DNA from: Octopus sinensis | Lineage: Eukaryota | Length of the DNA: 64,000 nt | Direction: 5' to 3' | Assembly (NCBI RefSeq): GCF_006345805.1 | Contig: NC_042999.1 | Coordinates: 83,018,001 to 83,082,000 of the forward strand | Shown here: positions 3,197 through 59,837 of the stretch, piece after piece | How positions within the stretch are numbered: the first letter of the stretch is position 1 | Layout: each line of letters opens with the position of its first letter | Made by a program: the position numbers and the translations under genes | The notes under the pieces: generated by a model | The model's input: only the letters and a program-made list of their open reading frames with translations | The model's database searches: none | Told to the model about the DNA's origin: nothing

Positions 3197-3612
3197 CTTA
3201 CTCTTTTACTCTCTTTTACTTGTTTCAGTCATTTGACTGCGGCCATGCTGGAGCACCGCCTTTAGTCGAGCAAATCGACCCCGGGACTTATTCTTTGTAA
3301 GCCCAGTACTTATTCTATCGGTCTCTTTTGCTTAACCGCTAAGTGACGGGGACGTAAACACACCACCATCGGTTGTCAAGCAATGCTAGGAGGACAAACA
3401 CAGACACATAGACATACACGCACACACACATATATATATATATAGATATATACGACGGGCTTCTTTCAGTTTCCGTCTACCAAATCCACTCACAAGGCTT
3501 TGGTCGGCCCGAGGCTATAGTAGAAGACGCTTGCCCAAGGTGCCATGCAGTGGGACTGAACCTGGAACCATGTGGTTGGTAAGGAAGCTACTTACCACAC
3601 AGCCACTCCTGC
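3197..3612 (-). mobile_element. Family A tRNA-derived SINE, full length (Octopus OR-like)
   Basis: On the minus strand: A-box-like TGGCTGTGTGG, B-box-like GGTTCAGTCCC, internal (TA)n/(TG)n tract, 3' stem-loops and (AGTAAAAG)n tail; highly similar to 62414-62814. Confidence 0.85.
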
Positions 3613-5165: not shown

Positions 5166-7200
5166 TGGTAAGAAGGAACAAAATAGTCTGAGAGAAGCAT
5201 GTTTGTCATTTCATGGCTGGTATGTGTGTATGAGGGTCAGTATTTTGTGATGAGGATGGTTGATAAGGTAGGAAAGGTGTTAACTTAAGTAATAAGATTT
5301 ATTGAACAACATATCTGTTGGCATGCACATATACCTAGATACGCATGTAAGAATATATGTATGTGTTGGAAATATGACTGTTCTATTATTATCTATTTTA
5401 TTAAGTATTTTTTTCCTTCTGTTTTATTATTTGTGTCTTGTTTATTTGGAACAATAAATTTTCTAAATCGAGCCACAATGCTTCCAGACCTTTACAGTTT
5501 CATCCTCAGGTTATATGAAGTGTTGTTGGCCTACATAACTGCCTGTCTTGCAGTAGGCAAATGCAAGTTATGTAGAATTTAAAATTTTGCTCTCAAGTTT
5601 TATTTCATCAGTCACAGTATTGTATTGTGCTATTAGTATTGGTTCCATCATATATCACCTATTTCTCTGGGGAATTCTACTATAGTGTGTGTTGTCTACT
5701 TATGCTTCAATTACTACTTCTTGTAAGTGCATGGTGTATCTACAAGTACAAGATAGTGTTGTATAAGTATGTCCAGTGGAACAGTAGAATCATGAAGTTT
5801 ACAACTTTGATGTTTATTTCAAATCTAAATATACCATACACCATACTTCCATCACTATTTCTGTTTTATTGCCTGTTATTCACCATGGTATCCAGCACAT
5901 TGTTATCTCTTGCCATAGTCTTTTGTTATCACCTTTATGAGACACAGGATTTCAAGATAAATATTCATCCCATATTTTTCTACATATTTTCCTTCTATGT
6001 TGAATACTTGGCACTTTATACAACTGACATCTACTGTTTGCATCACATTCTCATGCCATCATAGTGTCCTCTCCTACATGTAGTTTTCCTAATATCCAGC
6101 TTTTAGATTATTTGTGCACCATCATTCATATTCTCTAACATTACTCGTCAAGTAGATGTGTGGGGTTAGTGTGTGTGTGTCTGCCTGGATTCACCTGCCC
6201 TCCTATAGGTATTTATGTATGTGTGTAGCTATAGCTATGTACATATCTGTATATACATATCTATCTAATCTATCTATCTATCTATCTATAAATATATATA
6301 TATATATACATATCATGATCATCATCGTTTAACGTCCGTTTTCCATGCTAGCACGGGTTGGACGCATATATATATATATATATACACATACACACACACA
6401 CACATTGACATACATACATATATACAGTTGGCTTCTTTACAGTTTCCATCTCCCAGTTGCACTCAAGGCACTAGTTGACCCAGTGCCATGGTAGATTCTA
6501 GCTCAATACAGTGTACAATAGGACCAAGCTTGAGACCACTTGGCTGTGAAATGACATTCTTAACCACATAGTCATGTGTGTTTGTGTGTGTGTGTGTGTG
6601 TGTATGTGTGATTAGGTTAGATTAAATACACAGATGGAATTATTGATGAAGTGTTAGATTAATGGAATCATTGATTGGTAGATTGACAGGATCATTGATT
6701 GGTAATTTGATAGTTAGATAAAAGGATGTATAAATTGACCAACAGACAGATAGAAAGACGGATATTGATTGATTAAACTCATTGAATTAATTCAAATATT
6801 CTTTTAATCCTTCCCTCTGGCACCTGTGCAGGCAGTAATTTTCAATAAACTGCAGCTTCTGTTGCCATTACGATTGTTACAGCAGATGAAATGCACTTTC
6901 GTGCAATTCTTTATTCCAACTTTAAACACACAAATGCACTCACTTTGCTGTCCTAATTTGGTAGAGAGAGGGAGAGAGAGAAAGAGAGAGAGAGGAGGTA
7001 CAGGAGGAAGTGTATGTATGTGTGTGGGTGTAAAACTGATGCTGTCTGATACGATACCATTTCCTTTCACTGCATTTGTGTGTGTGTGTGTGTAAGAAAG
7101 AACAGTAGAATATGTGTGTGTATGTGTGTGTGTATGCAAGTGGGTTGTAACCATTTATTTTTTGTTTGTGCATGTGTTCACTTGTGTGTTACATAGCAAT

Positions 7201-7203
7201 ATA

Positions 7204-7282
<79 letters not shown>

Positions 7283-7287
7283 GTAAG

Positions 7288-7318
<31 letters not shown>

Positions 7319-7325
7319 GTATATG

Positions 7326-7396
<71 letters not shown>

Positions 7397-7427
7397 GTAT
7401 ATATATATATATATGTATGTATGTATG

Positions 7428-7458
<31 letters not shown>

Positions 7459-7630
7459 ATATATGTATGTATGTATATGTATGTATGTATATATATGTAT
7501 GTATGTATATGTATGTATGTATATATATGTGTGTATATGTATGTATGTATATGTATGTGTACATGCATGTATATATGTATATGTATGCATATTTGTATGT
7601 ATGTATGTGTGTGTGTGTGTGTGTGTGTAT
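7201..7630. repeat. Compound (TA)n/(TATG)n/(TG)n microsatellite, ~430 bp
   Basis: Directly visible; accounts for the stack of Y/I/M/C/V/H/T-rich ORFs at 7114-7709. Confidence 0.97.
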
Positions 7631-10688: not shown

Positions 10689-11139
10689 GAGCTGGTAGAA
10701 TTGTTAGCATGATAGACGAAATGCTTAGCATTTCCTTAGGTTTTATGTTCTGAGTTCAAATGCTGTGATGGCCAACTTTGCCTTTAATCATTTCAGGGGT
10801 CTGTAGCATACCAGTTGAGTACTGGATTGATGTAACTGACCAGCCCCCCCCCCTCCCGCAAATTTCAGGACTTGCACCTATAGTAGAAAGGATTATTATT
10901 ATTATTATTATTAAGGTGACAAGCGGGCAGAATCATTAATATGCTGGGCAAAATGCTTAGTGGCATTTTCTCCATCTTTATGTTCTGAGTTCACATTCTG
11001 CCAGGGTTCACTTTGCGTTTCATCCTTTCGGGGGGTCAATAAATTAAGTACCAATAAAACACTGGGTTGATGTAATCAACTAGTCCCCTTTATCAAAATT
11101 TCAGGCCTTGTGCCTTTAGTAGAAAAGATTATTATTATT
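10689..11139 (+). mobile_element. Two head-to-tail family C SINEs embedded in (ATT)n
   Basis: Each copy has GAGCTGGYAGAA...TTCTGAGTTCAMAT...CTTTGC...AAGTACCA...AGAAARGATTATTATT; (ATT)n runs lie before, between and after. Confidence 0.8.
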
Positions 11140-14655: not shown

Positions 14656-15720
14656 CTTAATCTCACAGCTAAAGCTGTGTATTTCAGAAGCCCTCAAAAT
14701 AAAGGGGTGCAAAAGGGTTCATCAATCATATCAACCTCAGTATTTTGTTTGATACTTCTTTTATCAATCTTGGAAGCAGTGAAAGTAAAGTGTGACTTGG
14801 AGTAGGATTTGAACTCAACAGTTTAAAGAGACAAACCAAATGCCACAATTTTTTTTTTATCCAATGATTTACCAGTTCCGCCAAACTGCTGACCAATCTT
14901 GTGTTTCGTGATTAAGTTAGTAACAGGAAAGGCATCCAGTCATAGAACATTGCTTTGAGAAAATACTTTGTGTCTAACAGTATAAAAAAAAAAGCAAAAA
15001 TTAAAACAATGGTAGCAATAATGAATTATTGGATAATATAACTCTGGGTGTACAAGAGAGATAACTTAGTAATGTCTGGAACACCTTTGACTCAAGTATG
15101 CTCAGTCAAGACTCACCTGGCACTAAACAACAACAACAACAACAACAAGAGCAACATCATTTGCGTCATATTCATAATGTTGCTTGTTTGTAAATATTTT
15201 CTACAAAGAGTAGCTTATTTGAGACGTAGCTTGTAAATCGTTGCCTGTCTTCTCAGAAACACATTAAACAGAAGAACTATTAGCAGATGTTAGCTGCTCT
15301 GAAAAGCTTATGATATGAAACTTAACTAATTGTCGTTATCATCAGCATAACATTCACTATTATCAACCTCAGCCTTCTCCTCCTTGTCATCATCAGCCAG
15401 GGTACTCCCAGAGTTGTTATCTGCCATGCTGCAGGAACCTCTCCTCCATCATACTCCACTCAATTAATCACCTACCATCCCTTACTATATAATCTTCACT
15501 CACCTGGTTATGCGCTGTTACTTCTATTTCTGTAGCTTCATCTTCAGATAAACAGATCTAAATGTTAACCTTTGTTAAAGACAAACAGTAGTATTAAGAC
15601 GTGTTTTCATATTTCCACTTATTCACTAGATAGGCACAAGTGTGGCTGTGTGGTAAGAAGTTTGCTTCCCAACCACATGGTTCTGGGTTCAGTTCTACTG
15701 CATGGTACATTGGGCAAGTG

Positions 15721-17282: not shown

Positions 17283-17332
<50 letters not shown>

Positions 17333-17345
17333 GCTGCTGCTGCTA

Positions 17346-17377
<32 letters not shown>

Positions 17378-17402
17378 ACTACTACTACTACTACTACTAC
17401 TA
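17283..17402. repeat. (CTA)n/(CTG)n trinucleotide repeat
   Basis: Directly visible; source of the poly-Leu ORF 17109-17483. Confidence 0.97.
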
Positions 17403-18664
17403 TATTTACACTTCCATTTCCACCCCTATTCACCTGTTTTATTTGTTGCTTTTGATTTATGTCCCTTATTTATTATTAGTTGAATGGATGGACAGATGTA
17501 GAACAAGAGAGTGGAGGACAGAATGATAGACTGCTTCCTAGTTACCATTCTGGTCTGGTACATTGATTGTGTCCATGAAGACAATAATGATGATTGCTGA
17601 ATTGACAGTTGTTTTTTTATAAATCATGGGGGGGTGTATTGGTTGGGGTGCCATGACACTGTTTTTTCTTTTTGTTTTTTGGGTTGTGTTGGCAGTTGAA
17701 ACATTAGCAATGATGGTGTTAGTGGCATGTCTTTGACAAGTCAGTGAAGTGTGTCTCAGAGAGATAGAGAGTGAGTGGGTGCAGTGGGGGTGGGGGGAAA
17801 TGAAAGGCTAAGAAATTTCTGTCATGAAAGCTCTAGGTGTGTGTGTGTGTGTGTTTAAAGACTTGAAAATTTTTTTTTAATTTATTGTACAGAGCCTGCC
17901 TGGAGACAACCAACTAGTTGCAACTAGTAAATAAACCCCACTACCATCTACTACTACTACCACCACCACAACCAACATTACTGCTACAGTCAACTCCATT
18001 ATCAATCAATCACTGCATCCACCACCACCACCACCACCATCACAACCACCACCATCACCACTACTACTACTACTACCACCACCACCACCATTACCACTGC
18101 TATAGTCACCTCCAATATCACTCACACTGCATCCACCCCCACCGCTACTACTACTACTACTACTACTACTCATAGTATTTCTTCCAATTTTTCTTTTGCT
18201 TTAGTAGTGCTGCTCTAAGTGTTACCATGAAAACAATAGGAGAATTAAATTTCATGCCTACTAACAAACTCTCACTTGACCTCTTGTATAGAGTGTGTAA
18301 GCAGCTGAAATAAATCCCCTATCAACTAACTCATTATTGACTATTCAAAACCAGGACCCATCCTCTTTATTATTTTTTTTTTATCTTAGTGAATTTGGAG
18401 ACTTAGTACCTGTCTGTGTAATCTATTCCCCTTCTGGGTTTTAGAGTAGGCCAGAAGGAAAGGGAAAATGTGTTTAGGATGGGTTACTCATCATTAGATG
18501 TCTCTGATGAAGATTGGTTAGTTTATTTATTTACTTTGGTTCCAACACATCTTATATATATATATATATATATATATATCTAAATGTGAAACAAGGTGGA
18601 AAAAAAAGAGTACTCAAATACCAGTGGTAGAGTAATATGCTTTATTTAAAGCAGCAGAAAATTC

Positions 18665-18718
18665 AACAAAATCTGTTACTCTGAGTTTCTCGTTGCTGTT
18701 CATCAGACAGTTTTTGTT
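18665..18718 (-). ncRNA. Mirror-image hammerhead motif on the minus strand
   Basis: Same as the plus-strand copy except that stem II reads CA-GCAA-CG (one pair lost). Confidence 0.55.
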
Positions 18719-18748
18719 AGAATGGAACCGATATATAGGTTCCATTCT

Positions 18749-18802
18749 AACAAAAACTGTCTGATGAACGGCAACGAGAAACTCAGAGTAACAGATTTTG
18801 TT
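18749..18802 (+). ncRNA. Type I minimal hammerhead ribozyme motif (predicted cleavage after GUA, position 18790)
   Basis: Stem I CTGT(18757-60)/ACAG(18791-94), extended by AACAAAA/TTTTGTT; core CTGATGA 18761-67; stem II CG-GCAA-CG; GAAA 18778-81; near-palindromic stem III ACTCAGAGT. The 10.1/11.1 position is an A.A mismatch, so activity is uncertain. Confidence 0.65.
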
Positions 18803-18980
18803 GAATTTTCTGCTGCTTTAAATAAAGCATATATATATATATATATATATAAAATTTTGATAGAAATGGTAAGACAACAAAAGAGGGAAAGAGAAAGAGA
18901 CCTTGATATAATGTTCTGTATCTGTATATATATATATATTTGTGTTTTGCATAATGACTTACATAGATGGAAGATATTAA

Positions 18981-19014
18981 TCTAATAATTATTTTTATTC
19001 TTTTTCAGGTGAGT
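18981..19014 (+). promoter_or_regulatory. Candidate recursive splice site (ratchet point): 3' splice site immediately followed by a 5' splice site
   Basis: TCTAAT branch-like motif at 18981-86; 14 of the 15 nt at 18992-19006 are pyrimidines; AG 19007-08 is directly followed by GTGAGT 19009-14. Confidence 0.55.
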
Positions 19015-19279
19015 GAGATTCATCTAATCCTGAGTTTTATATATGTGTGTGTGTGCGCGTAATATATATATATATATATATGCACATAAGCTGAGGTATG
19101 TCGGAATTTTTTTCTTTACTATTTTATCTCAAAGTGCACCTCCTTTCAAAATTTTAATAATTCAACAGAAAAGTAGTTTTAGACAGAAAGCCACTATTGC
19201 TTAGCAACCTTGGAAGAATGAAATGCAAAGTTGACCATGCTGGGATTTGAACTCAGAATTATTATTACTATTATTAATA

Positions 19280-19500
19280 ATAATAATAATCCTTTCTACT
19301 ATAGACGTAAGGCTTGGAATTTGCGAGGAGGGAACTAGTCAATTACCCAGTGTTTCACTGGTACTTAATTTATCAACCTTGAGAGGATGAAAGGCTAAAG
19401 TCAACCTTGGTGGAATTTGAACTCAGAATGTAGTGACAGGCAAAATATTGCTAAGTATTTCTTTCATCCAGTATGCTAACAATTCTTCTAACTCACCACC
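19280..19500 (-). mobile_element. Family C SINE in (TAA)n
   Basis: Reverse complement of the family C head and core; a second similar copy lies at 19893-20110. Confidence 0.75.
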
Positions 19501-19533
<33 letters not shown>

Positions 19534-19880: not shown

Positions 19881-19892
19881 TCAATAATAATA

Positions 19893-20110
19893 GTCCTTTC
19901 TACAGAAGGCACAAGATCTGAAATTTGGTACTGAAGGGACTAGCCGATTACATGAACCCCAGTGTCTCACTGGTACTTAATTCATTGAACCTGAAAGAAT
20001 GAAAGGCAAAGTCGACCTTGGTGGAATTTGAACTCAGAATGTAGCGATGGGCGAAATTGCCCTTAACATTTCGTCCAGCGTGCTAATGATTATGCCAGCT
20101 CACCACCTTA
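19893..20110 (-). mobile_element. Family C SINE in (TAA)n
   Basis: GGAATTTGAACTCAGAA (reverse B box) and AAAGGCAAAGTCGACC core are present. Confidence 0.75.
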
Positions 20111-20699
20111 ATAATAATGATAATTATAATAATAGTAAACATCATCATTGCATTAAGTAAAGTACAGACATCTTGATGAAAATGTAAATAAACTTATATA
20201 ATAGCATGGAGAACGGACGTTAAACGACGATGATGATGATGATGATGATGATAATTAATATTTCGAATATTGCTAATTTGATAGGGGGACTTTGCATTAA
20301 ACCCCACTGTGTAAAGAGTTCCTTGATAAAATCATAAAGTTCTCTTAGGGCAGTCTAACTGTGAAAATAATCTATTTTAAATAACTAATCAACACCAAAC
20401 CATTTTGCCCATTAAACATGAATGTAAAACATTAAACAAAAACGAAAAAAAAAAGAGTGGATTGCTTGGAGTTTAAATCTTTGATTAGTGAGAAATTTTG
20501 CTCAAAAAGCAGATGACTGAAATTTTGAAAATCCTAAAATTTCCAGAGCTTCCTTGGATTCCGTTTCAGCCCTAGGATATCTATCAACCTGCTGCATGTT
20601 GTTGCTTGGTCCCAAAACATTCCTGATCAAATAGACTTATAATCAAGTAAATTCGATTTGACTATCATGTCTTTTAGGGTTTTTAGGACTAGATTATTT

Positions 20700-25196: not shown

Positions 25197-26150
25197 ATGC
25201 AGAAATTGTCCCTTATATGCTTTCTTGAAACAATACATTATACAGTGTTTGGAGGCAGTCAAGTGAGGATTAAATATCAAAAATAAATAAATGAATAAAC
25301 TATACAGTATATGTGTTGTTGCTTAGTTGCAGGTCAACCCCAATTTAGCTGACCTTATGTTCAAAAGTATATGTAAAGTGTATTGGTCATTAGAGCAAAA
25401 ATCCCCAAGGGCCATGCATTACCTAATGTCCTTTTTTTTCTTCTTAGATTACCAGGTGATTTTGCTGTTATTTCTAGTCACCAGGTCTCTCACTTTGGCT
25501 CCTATTGTTGTTGATATAGCCTCAGGTCAGTTCCTGAAAGACCAGTTAACTGTAACAATCTAGCCTTGACCATTCCACTTTTTTTAGCATAATGCAAAGT
25601 GCTGCATTACACTACTTAATATTGCTTGTCTTTTACCTTTTATGAGAGTAAGATTGCACTTGGTAGACATCTGGCTGCTATTTCTTGCATGACCAGTGAC
25701 CACTTCTATATTTTATACTTATATATATATGTTTGTGTGTGTGAAGTATATTTGCCACTTATATATATATATGTATATAATCTTTTCCTATCATAGTTTT
25801 CCCAAGAGACTGTCGTTGCTAATGGCAGTGGGATGAACCATGGACAGGATTTACCAGGGGAAACATGTAATTAAAAACTTGTCCATATGAATCCCATGAG
25901 GGTGGAGGCTGGGAGGATTTGAGAAATCAGTGGAGAATAACAAAAAGGCAACATTTAATGTCTCTTGACCTCCTTAACTAACAAAGCCATAAAGAGGCCT
26001 AACTTGACCCCAACATACCCTCTTAATTAATATCCCTGACACCAACCACTCAACTGCCCCTGTCACTCTTAGAAAAAACTCTCTTCACCTCAGATCTGAC
26101 CTTATCTACTCTCCTCCTACCCTAAAATGGTAGTTGATATAAGGTCAGAT

Positions 26151-45280: not shown

Positions 45281-45326
45281 CTCTCTATCTCTCTCTCTCT
45301 CCTCTCTCTCTCCTCTCTCTCCTCCT

Positions 45327-45421
<95 letters not shown>
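45281..45421. repeat. Interrupted (CT)n polypyrimidine/polypurine tract
   Basis: Directly visible; ~140 bp of C/T only. Confidence 0.95.
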
Positions 45422-49166: not shown

Positions 49167-49256
49167 TTGTATATGAAGATATATACATACATGAATATAT
49201 ATTTCCACATGCACACATACTTGTGTATATATGTATATATATATGTATATATTTAA

Positions 49257-49487
49257 GGCGGCGAGCTGGTAGAAACGTTAGCACGCCGGGCGAAATTCGT
49301 AGCCGTATTTTGTCTGTCGTTACGTTCCGAGTTCAAATTCCGCCGAGGTCGACTTTGCCTTTCATCCTTTCGGGGTCAATAAATTAAGTACCAGTTACGC
49401 ACTGGGGTCGATGTAGTCGACTTAATCCCTTTGTCTGTCCTTGTTTGTCCCCTCTGTGTTTAGCCCCTTGTGGGTAGTAAAGAAATA
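49257..49487 (+). mobile_element. Family C tRNA-derived SINE, young CpG-rich copy
   Basis: B box GAGTTCAAATTCC, core GTCGACTTTGCCTTTCATCCTTTCGGGGTC, tail CCCCTTGTGGGTAGTAAAGAAATA; inserted in a TA-rich repeat. Confidence 0.88.
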
Positions 49488-59612: not shown

Positions 59613-59837
59613 AGTGAGCTGGCAGAAACAGTAGCATGCCGGGCGAAATGCTTAGCAATATTTCATCTGCCATTACATTCTGAGTTCAAATTCCTCCGGG
59701 GTCGACTTTGCCTTTCAACTTTTCGGAGTTGATAAATTAAGTACCAGTTATGCACTGGGGTTGATGTAATTGACTAAATCCCTTTGCCTGTCCTTGTTTG
59801 TCCCCTCTATGTTTAGCCCCTTGTGTGCAATAAAGAA
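59613..59837 (+). mobile_element. Family C SINE, full length, with 15-bp TSD
   Basis: ATAAGAATG(T/C)AGCAA at 59598-59612 and 59838-59852. Confidence 0.88.

What the first reader, a model, noticed from the sequence alone, without database searches (positions are those of the whole stretch)
18981..19014. Textbook recursive splice site (zero-nucleotide exon) motif
Seen: CTAAT branch motif 23 nt upstream, a 14/15 pyrimidine tract, then CAG|GTGAGT with no intervening base, in sequence I could not assign to a repeat. Established: Drosophila ratchet points and vertebrate recursive sites have this AG|GT architecture and occur in very long introns. A rough estimate gives under one CAGGTRAGT per window by chance, and the added tract and branch point make chance less likely, though T-runs are common here. 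Inference: the window is part of a giant plus-strand intron removed stepwise. I am not aware of recursive splicing being characterised in cephalopods.
Basis: partly seen in the sequence, partly recalled or inferred. Interest (0 to 1): 0.7.

Follow-up and report, generated by a model that had tools for sequence, protein, structure and literature searches.

The report
Lone recursive-splice-like motif in octopus DNA
The sequence really does contain a textbook back-to-back splice acceptor and donor (…CTAAT…T-rich tract…CAG|GTGAGT) in non-coding octopus DNA, but one such site per window is about what a genome of this size gives by chance, and nothing available here shows that it is transcribed, conserved or used.

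Summary
CTAAT lies at 18982-18986, a 14/15 pyrimidine tract at 18992-19006, and CAG|GTGAGT at 19006-19014. It is by far the best AG|GT composite among 345 AGGT sites on both strands (14.6 bits against 8.1 for the next). Both halves score like genuine Octopus vulgaris rhodopsin splice sites. A second donor (GAG|GTATGT) 87 nt downstream would give the cryptic 'RS-exon' that fly ratchet points require.

The interpretation cannot be tested here. No transcript data were reachable. The only octopod DNA obtained was an unrelated O. vulgaris locus, not an orthologue of this site. No gene was found in the window.

- **Circumstantial support:** no coding signal in 64 kb, and a + strand excess of T over A and G over C, as in sense-strand introns of mammals.
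- **Against:** only one strong site in 64 kb. It sits in AT-rich sequence between microsatellites, a 198-bp palindrome and SINEs. The chance expectation is 0.002-0.06 per window, or about 10^2-10^3 per octopus-sized genome.

My estimates are: non-selected chance motif about 0.55, genuine recursive site about 0.2, edge of an unannotated non-coding exon about 0.1. If real, it would be a new member of a known kind and the first in a cephalopod. As it stands it is an unverified motif hit of low to moderate interest.

The parts
18982..18986 (+). CTAAT branch-point-like motif (CTRAY); the putative branch A at 18985 is 23 nt upstream of the AG
   Evidence: Read directly. It is the only strict CTRAY in the -13 to -45 interval. 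A real O. vulgaris rhodopsin intron has ACTAAT about 35 nt before its acceptor.
18992..19006 (+). Pyrimidine tract, 14/15 Y (13 T), with TT at positions -5/-6 and C at -3
   Evidence: The acceptor half scores 9.6 bits, against 14.1 and 11.7 for two genuine O. vulgaris acceptors on the same ad hoc matrix.
19006..19008 (+). CAG acceptor; the putative 3' splice junction follows 19008
19009..19014 (+). GTGAGT donor directly abutting the AG (6/6 match to GTRAGT); this is the 5' splice site that would be regenerated
   Evidence: The donor half scores 5.0 bits, against 4.7 for two genuine O. vulgaris GTAAGT donors.
19009..19095 (+). Hypothetical 87-nt cryptic RS-exon. It has stop codons in all three frames and is mostly (TG)n/(TA)n microsatellite
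   Evidence: Sequence; frames read directly. It is delimited by the next good donor.
19096..19101 (+). Downstream donor GAG|GTATGT, the candidate RS-exon donor
   Evidence: It is the only site with at least 5/6 consensus positions in the 390 nt downstream. The density of AGGTRNGT gives about a 3% chance of one falling within 30-250 nt.
18635..18832 (.). Context: a 198-bp near-perfect palindrome 176 nt upstream, not part of the motif
   Evidence: Self-BLAST shows 98% identity over 198 bp. As RNA it forms a hairpin of about 97 bp.
19190..19510 (-). Context: tRNA-derived SINE copies with (AAT)n tails, about 180 nt downstream
   Evidence: ARAGORN finds a tRNA-like hit at 19232-19306 on the - strand. 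Family copies are listed. The family is shared with O. vulgaris.

Best explanation
This is a genuine and unusually strong juxtaposed 3'/5' splice-site motif in AT-rich, repeat-flanked, non-coding octopod DNA. It most likely arose without selection. A T-rich stretch happens to end in CAG and is followed by GTGAGT. At the frequency measured here, this happens some hundreds of times in a genome of about 2.7 Gb.

If the + strand is transcribed as part of a long intron, which strand composition hints at, the spliceosome could use the site occasionally as a cryptic or stochastic recursive site. There is no evidence that it is a conserved, constitutively used ratchet point.

Shown: the motif, its rank in the window and its chance frequency. 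Inferred: the absence of selected function.
For: - **Chance rate:** the expectation is 0.002-0.06 per 64 kb on both strands, which scales to roughly 80-2,500 per 2.7-Gb genome. The genome size is from my own knowledge.
- **Core not enriched:** the core alone shows 3 matches against 1.15 expected.
- **Local composition:** the stretch is 73% A+T with 37% T, so a T-tract is cheap here. The window holds 1,916 16-mers with at least 14 pyrimidines.
- **Surroundings:** the site lies in a stretch of about 180 bp between (TA)n at 18829-51, (TG)n(TA)n at 19036-85, a 198-bp palindrome and SINEs. This is fast-evolving sequence rather than a conserved island.
- **No partners:** there is only one strong composite site in 64 kb and no + strand excess of weaker ones; at 4 bits or more there are 2 on + and 4 on -.
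- **Mouse comparison:** of 4.77 million sense-strand AGGT sites, only 20 are recursive sites (PMC8797253).
Against: - Within this window the site is a clear outlier, at 14.6 bits against 8.1 for the next site.
- Both halves match genuine octopus splice sites, and TT at -5/-6 is as in 99.5% of fly ratchet points (10.1101/006163).
- A decent second donor sits 87 nt downstream, which has about a 3% chance and is what the RS-exon model requires (PMC8605326).
- + strand T>A of 4.9% (z 8.5) and G>C of 4.3% (z 5.5) after masking, together with no coding signal in 64 kb, fit a long + strand intron.
- In flies, 63% of introns over 40 kb have a recursive site (PMC6110457). If octopus were fly-like, a site this strong in a sense intron would probably be real.
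Confidence: 0.55

Rival explanations
1. It is a true recursive splice site (ratchet point with a cryptic RS-exon) inside a very long + strand intron. All steps below are inferred.

1. U2AF binds the T-tract and U2 pairs at CTAAT (A at 18985).
2. The 87-nt stretch 19009-19095 is recognised by exon definition through the GTATGT donor at 19096.
3. The upstream exon is ligated to 19009, recreating exon|GTGAGT.
4. This stronger regenerated donor is then used for the next step, so the cryptic exon leaves with the rest of the intron and never appears in mRNA.
For: - The motif matches the fly and vertebrate consensus completely, including TT at -5/-6 (10.1101/006163).
- Both halves are as strong as real octopus sites.
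- There is a downstream donor at +87 nt, and the interval has stops in all frames, as in fly RS-exons (PMC8605326).
- Strand asymmetry fits + sense transcription.
- No exon-like or coding signal appears in 64 kb.
Against: - There is no evidence of transcription, of intermediates or of conservation.
- It is a single site in 64 kb, where fly long introns are cut into 9-15 kb pieces (PMC6110457).
- It is embedded in microsatellite and SINE-rich sequence.
- The supposed RS-exon is mostly (TG)n(TA)n.
- In mammals, whose repeat-expanded introns resemble octopus introns more, such sites are very rare (PMC8797253).
- The window could equally be intergenic.
Confidence: 0.2
2. It is one edge of an ordinary but unannotated exon. 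One option is an 87-nt non-coding or 'poison' cassette exon (19009-19095) that uses the acceptor at 19008 and the donor at 19096. The other is the donor end of a non-coding exon lying upstream of 19009.
For: - An acceptor and a downstream donor 87 nt apart are both present.
- In mouse, 46 of 84 AGGT candidates that had junction reads turned out to be unannotated exons (PMC8797253).
Against: - All three frames of 19009-19095 contain stops, and most of the interval is microsatellite.
- The sequence upstream of 19008 is an A/T-rich tract with stops and no ORF support.
- There are no homologues or Pfam hits for any neighbouring ORF.
- A GTGAGT at the very start of an exon would compete with its own donor.
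Confidence: 0.1
3. It is a by-product of a decayed mobile element. The T-tract would be the antisense copy of an A-rich retroposon tail, with a fortuitous AG and GT beside it, as happens in exonised antisense SINEs of mammals. This overlaps with the chance reading.
For: - Minus-strand SINE material begins about 180 nt downstream, and microsatellites typical of SINE tails lie between it and the site.
- About 27% of the window is tandem or interspersed repeat detectable from the window alone.
Against: - Stretch 18855-19037 matches no other copy in the window even at word size 9.
- It matches nothing in the 24-kb O. vulgaris locus.
- The SINE copies here carry (AAT)n tails, not A-rich ones.
Confidence: 0.1

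Closest known systems
Drosophila intronic ratchet points (Ubx, kuz, Bx and more than 500 others) with cryptic RS-exons
   Same: - Pyrimidine tract with TT at -5/-6, then CAG|GTRAGT with no intervening base.
- A possible short cryptic exon closed by a second, somewhat weaker donor.
- An interval that cannot be read through.
   Different: Fly sites are defined by ultraconservation, junction and lariat reads, saw-tooth coverage and position in annotated long introns. None of these could be tested here. Fly RS-exons are about 50 nt, against 87 nt here, and very long fly introns usually carry several sites.
Vertebrate recursive sites / RS-exons (for example in Cadm2, Hs6st3, Lsamp)
   Same: - An AGGT core with a strong 3' splice site.
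- Strong complementarity to U1.
- A downstream donor for exon definition.
- A repeat-rich long-intron setting, if the window is an intron.
   Different: Known vertebrate sites lie in the first or second intron, over 50 kb long, of very long neuronal genes, and they are highly conserved. The host gene, intron rank and conservation are all unknown here.
Non-selected cryptic splice sites and pseudo-exons in long introns, including 'stochastic' recursive splicing described in human nascent RNA
   Same: A consensus-strength site with no sign of selection, in repeat-rich non-coding sequence. Any use would be occasional.
   Different: Most such sites are single acceptors or single donors. A perfect back-to-back pair plus a branch motif is rarer, at about 0.002-0.06 per 64 kb here.

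Membership tests
Fly-type intronic ratchet point | Juxtaposed acceptor and donor: Y-tract, YAG|GTRAGT, zero intervening bases | tested here: met
   It is the top-ranked of 345 AGGT sites.
Fly-type intronic ratchet point | TT at positions -5/-6 of the acceptor (196/197 fly sites) | tested here: met
   ctttttCAG read; criterion taken from 10.1101/006163.
Fly-type intronic ratchet point | Cryptic RS-exon closed by a downstream donor weaker than the ratchet-point donor | tested here: inconclusive
   GAG|GTATGT lies 87 nt downstream, and GTGAGT is the closer match to the consensus. The interval is mostly microsatellite and its use is unknown. Criterion from PMC8605326.
Fly-type intronic ratchet point | Lies in the sense strand of a long intron | not testable with these tools
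   No annotation or transcript was reachable. The only hints are that no coding signal was found and that the + strand shows T>A and G>C skew.
Fly-type intronic ratchet point | Strong conservation of the acceptor|donor motif relative to its flanks | not testable with these tools
   The orthologous sequence could not be fetched. The only octopod DNA obtained is an unrelated locus.
Fly-type intronic ratchet point | Splicing intermediates: exon-to-site junction reads, lariats, saw-tooth coverage | not testable with these tools
Fly-type intronic ratchet point | Typical rather than defining: several sites per very long intron, giving segments of about 9-15 kb | tested here: not met
   There is one strong site in 64 kb; the next + strand site scores 6.0 bits. 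Spacing is from PMC6110457. This feature is not defining, so it lowers but does not exclude membership.
Vertebrate RS-site / RS-exon | Strong 3' splice site at AGGT plus a strong reconstituted 5' splice site | tested here: inconclusive
   The intronic half, GTGAGT, is optimal. The exonic half depends on the unknown upstream exon.
Vertebrate RS-site / RS-exon | Located in the first or second intron, over 50 kb, of a very long neuronal gene | not testable with these tools
   The host gene is unknown.
Ordinary coding cassette exon | Open reading frame between acceptor and donor | tested here: not met
   19009-19095 has stops in all three frames (read). It was not recovered in the scan for open exon candidates.

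The most novel reading that the evidence does not exclude
The site is a conserved, constitutively used ratchet point with an 87-nt cryptic RS-exon in a giant octopus intron. That would make it the first recursive splice site described in a cephalopod, or in any lophotrochozoan. It would also show that the fly-type solution to very long introns is shared across bilaterians with expanded genomes.
Probability: 0.2. Interest if true: 0.5.

Novelty: new member of a known kind. Interest (0 to 1): 0.25.

Why it matters
Recursive splicing is documented in flies and vertebrates. In the held literature it is not described for cephalopods. Cephalopod genomes are large and repeat-rich, and their neuronal genes have very long introns.

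A validated site would extend the mechanism to a third major animal lineage. It would also give a concrete locus for asking whether octopus resembles flies, where recursive sites occur in most introns over 40 kb, or mammals, where classical sites are very rare.

A single motif match cannot carry that weight. Its present value is as a cheap, well-defined target for a check against existing octopus RNA-seq and genome alignments.

Tried and rejected
1. **Exact look-up of the two ORFs touching the site in public assemblies:** not on record.
2. **Homologue search with the 111-aa ORF that ends at 18985.** The aim was to reach orthologous octopod contigs. There were no hits.
3. **Homologue search with an ORF from the commonest repeat, to identify the taxon:** no hits.
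4. **Exact 27-mer scan of metagenome contigs:** 0 matches.
5. **Exact look-up of the ten longest ATG ORFs:** none is in the collection.
6. **Pfam scan of the non-repeat stop-to-stop ORFs of at least 50 aa (most of a filtered set of 195):** 0 families. Rfam gave 0 matches.
8. **One long concatenated homologue query:** abandoned, because the word pre-filter would return an unmanageable number of chance candidates.
9. **SINE orientation as a clue to the strand of transcription:** orientations are mixed, so this is uninformative.
10. **Scan for exon candidates with strong sites and an open frame:** only one locus was found (25448-25525, + strand), which is about what chance gives.
11. **First Markov simulation:** timed out and was redone in vectorised form.
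12. **Broad literature search on molluscs:** badly specified and uninformative.

What did work was a query with the octopus rhodopsin sequence as I recalled it. This gave an O. vulgaris locus. That locus showed that the window shares its repeat families with Octopus, and it supplied two real introns for comparison.

Full report
**The observation.** The sequence at 18981-19014 reads t-CTAAT-aattatttttattctttttCAG|GTGAGT.
- CTAAT occupies 18982-18986, and its fourth base (A, 18985) lies 23 nt before the G of the AG at 19008.
- The 15 bases at 18992-19006 contain one purine.
- There is no AG between the branch motif and the acceptor.
- Positions -5/-6 are TT and -3 is C.
- GTGAGT follows with no intervening base.

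The description is therefore accurate.

**Is it more than chance?**
- The 9-mer CAGGTRAGT occurs three times on both strands against 1.15 expected, and 13 of 100 shuffles do as well. The other two copies are on the minus strand (15111, 15498).
- With five pyrimidines added, the pattern is unique against 0.03 expected.
- Simulated 64-kb sequences from Markov models of order 1, 3 and 5 give 0.002-0.027 sites with YAG|GTRAGT and at least 14/16 pyrimidines. Adding a CTRAY and an AG-free zone gives 0.0007-0.006.
- Real sequence is clumpier than these models. The window has 1,916 16-mers with at least 14 pyrimidines, which gives 0.03-0.06 expected sites.
- On an ad hoc log-odds matrix (frequencies from my own knowledge, used only for ranking), the site scores 14.6 bits. 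The next best of 345 AGGT sites on either strand scores 8.1.

The site is thus a clear outlier in this window. The criteria were chosen after seeing it, and the rate scales to roughly 10^2-10^3 such sites in a genome of about 2.7 Gb (size from my own knowledge).

**Surroundings.**
- The 180-bp stretch carrying the site (18855-19037) has no second copy in the window.
- It is 73% A+T.
- It is boxed in by (TA)n at 18829-18851, (TG)n(TA)n at about 19036-19085, a 198-bp near-perfect palindrome at 18635-18832, and tRNA-derived SINE copies from about 19190 on the minus strand.
- The next good donor downstream is GAG|GTATGT at 19095|19096. It delimits an 87-nt interval with stops in all frames, and AGGTRNGT is sparse enough that one within 30-250 nt has about a 3% chance.

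**What the window is.**
- No ORF exceeds 228 aa, and most long ORFs are translated microsatellites.
- The non-repeat ORFs of at least 50 aa that I scanned gave no Pfam hit. Rfam gave nothing.
- The ten longest ATG ORFs are not in the protein collection.
- A scan for open exon candidates with strong sites found one locus, about what chance predicts.
- After masking repeats, the + strand has 4.9% more T than A (z 8.5) and 4.3% more G than C (z 5.5). The T excess fades beyond 48 kb. This is the sign and size of the transcription-coupled asymmetry known from mammalian introns (my own knowledge). Whether it holds in cephalopods is untested.
- A query with the octopus rhodopsin sequence as I recalled it retrieved O. 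vulgaris rhodopsin and its 24-kb locus on chromosome OX597836.1.
- The window's two main repeat families match copies in that locus at 85-94% identity over 140-350 bp.
- The two rhodopsin introns show GTAAGT donors, long T/C tracts, YAG acceptors and an ACTAAT. On the same matrix, their acceptors score 14.1 and 11.7 and their donors 4.7, against 9.6 and 5.0 for the candidate.

**What could not be tested.** Transcription, splicing intermediates and conservation are the features that define recursive sites. None was reachable.

**Weighing the readings, using the literature.**
- In flies, ratchet points number over 500, are ultraconserved and need a cryptic RS-exon with a downstream donor (PMC8605326).
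- 196 of 197 fly ratchet points have TT at -5/-6 (10.1101/006163).
- 63% of fly introns over 40 kb carry at least one recursive site, giving segments of 9-15 kb (PMC6110457).
- In mouse brain, only 20 sites were found among 4.77 million sense AGGT, and more than half of the junction-supported candidates were unannotated exons (PMC8797253).
- Other work argues for widespread stochastic use of such sites in human nascent RNA (PMC13105047).

If octopus were fly-like and the window were a + strand intron, a site this strong would probably be real. If octopus is mammal-like, it is probably not.

I put about 0.45 on a + strand intron and about one third on fly-like behaviour. That gives about 0.2 for a genuine selected recursive site and about 0.55 for a non-selected motif, whether unused or used only sporadically. 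The remainder is split between an unannotated non-coding exon and a repeat-derived by-product.

**Comparison and novelty.** The site works like, or would work like, a fly ratchet point with an RS-exon. It meets every sequence-level criterion I could test. It fails only the typical, non-defining expectation of several sites per very long intron.

Membership cannot be granted, because the defining functional and evolutionary features are untested. If confirmed, it would be a new member of a known kind in a lineage where the held literature has no report.

Noticed in passing
window 18635-18832: A 198-bp near-perfect palindrome (98% arm identity). As RNA it forms an uninterrupted hairpin of about 97 bp; the fold of 18620-19110 has an MFE of -224 kcal/mol and a z-score of -19.9. 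There is no other copy in the window. It could be a foldback or MITE-like element or a recent inverted duplication. If transcribed, it would be a long double-stranded RNA of the kind that RNA-editing enzymes act on.
   Followed up: partly
window 1-64000: After repeat masking, the + strand has T>A (4.9%, z 8.5) and G>C (4.3%, z 5.5). The T excess is about 0.09 at 1-16 kb, about 0.045 at 16-48 kb and about 0 at 48-64 kb. This might mark the end of a transcription unit or a replication-related shift.
   Followed up: partly
window 19190-19510, 19890-20115, 10907-11132, 49253-49431, 59614-59784: Copies of a tRNA-derived SINE with (AAT)n tails, in both orientations. ARAGORN calls 19232-19306 (-) a tRNA-Ile, which is most likely the SINE head plus low-complexity sequence. 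The family is shared with the O. vulgaris rhodopsin locus (L001).
   Followed up: partly
window 3440-3600 and 16 other places; L001 19342-20507: A second interspersed repeat family with 17 copies in both orientations. Copies are 83-91% identical over 340-410 bp to copies beside the Octopus vulgaris rhodopsin gene. This ties the window to octopods.
   Followed up: yes
window 25447-25526 (+): Two acceptors 8 nt apart (TTCTTAG| at 25447 and CAG|GTGATT at 25455) are followed by a good donor at 25525|25526, enclosing a 78-nt open frame. This is the only candidate 'exon' with strong sites in the window and also the second-best + strand AG|GT composite. No homology support was obtainable.
   Followed up: partly
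window 7199-7606; 17283-17402; 18019-18090; 45281-45421: Large simple repeats: a complex (TA/TG) minisatellite with periods 14/18/32 that creates 120-180-aa pseudo-ORFs in all six frames, (CTA)40, (CCA)24 and (CT)74. Tandem repeats cover 10.5% of the window.
   Followed up: no
window 15111-15119 and 15498-15506 (-): Two further CAGGTGAGT matches on the minus strand, 387 bp apart. Neither has a pyrimidine tract of splice-site quality (the best acceptor half scores 3.0 bits), and there is no exon-like context.
   Followed up: partly
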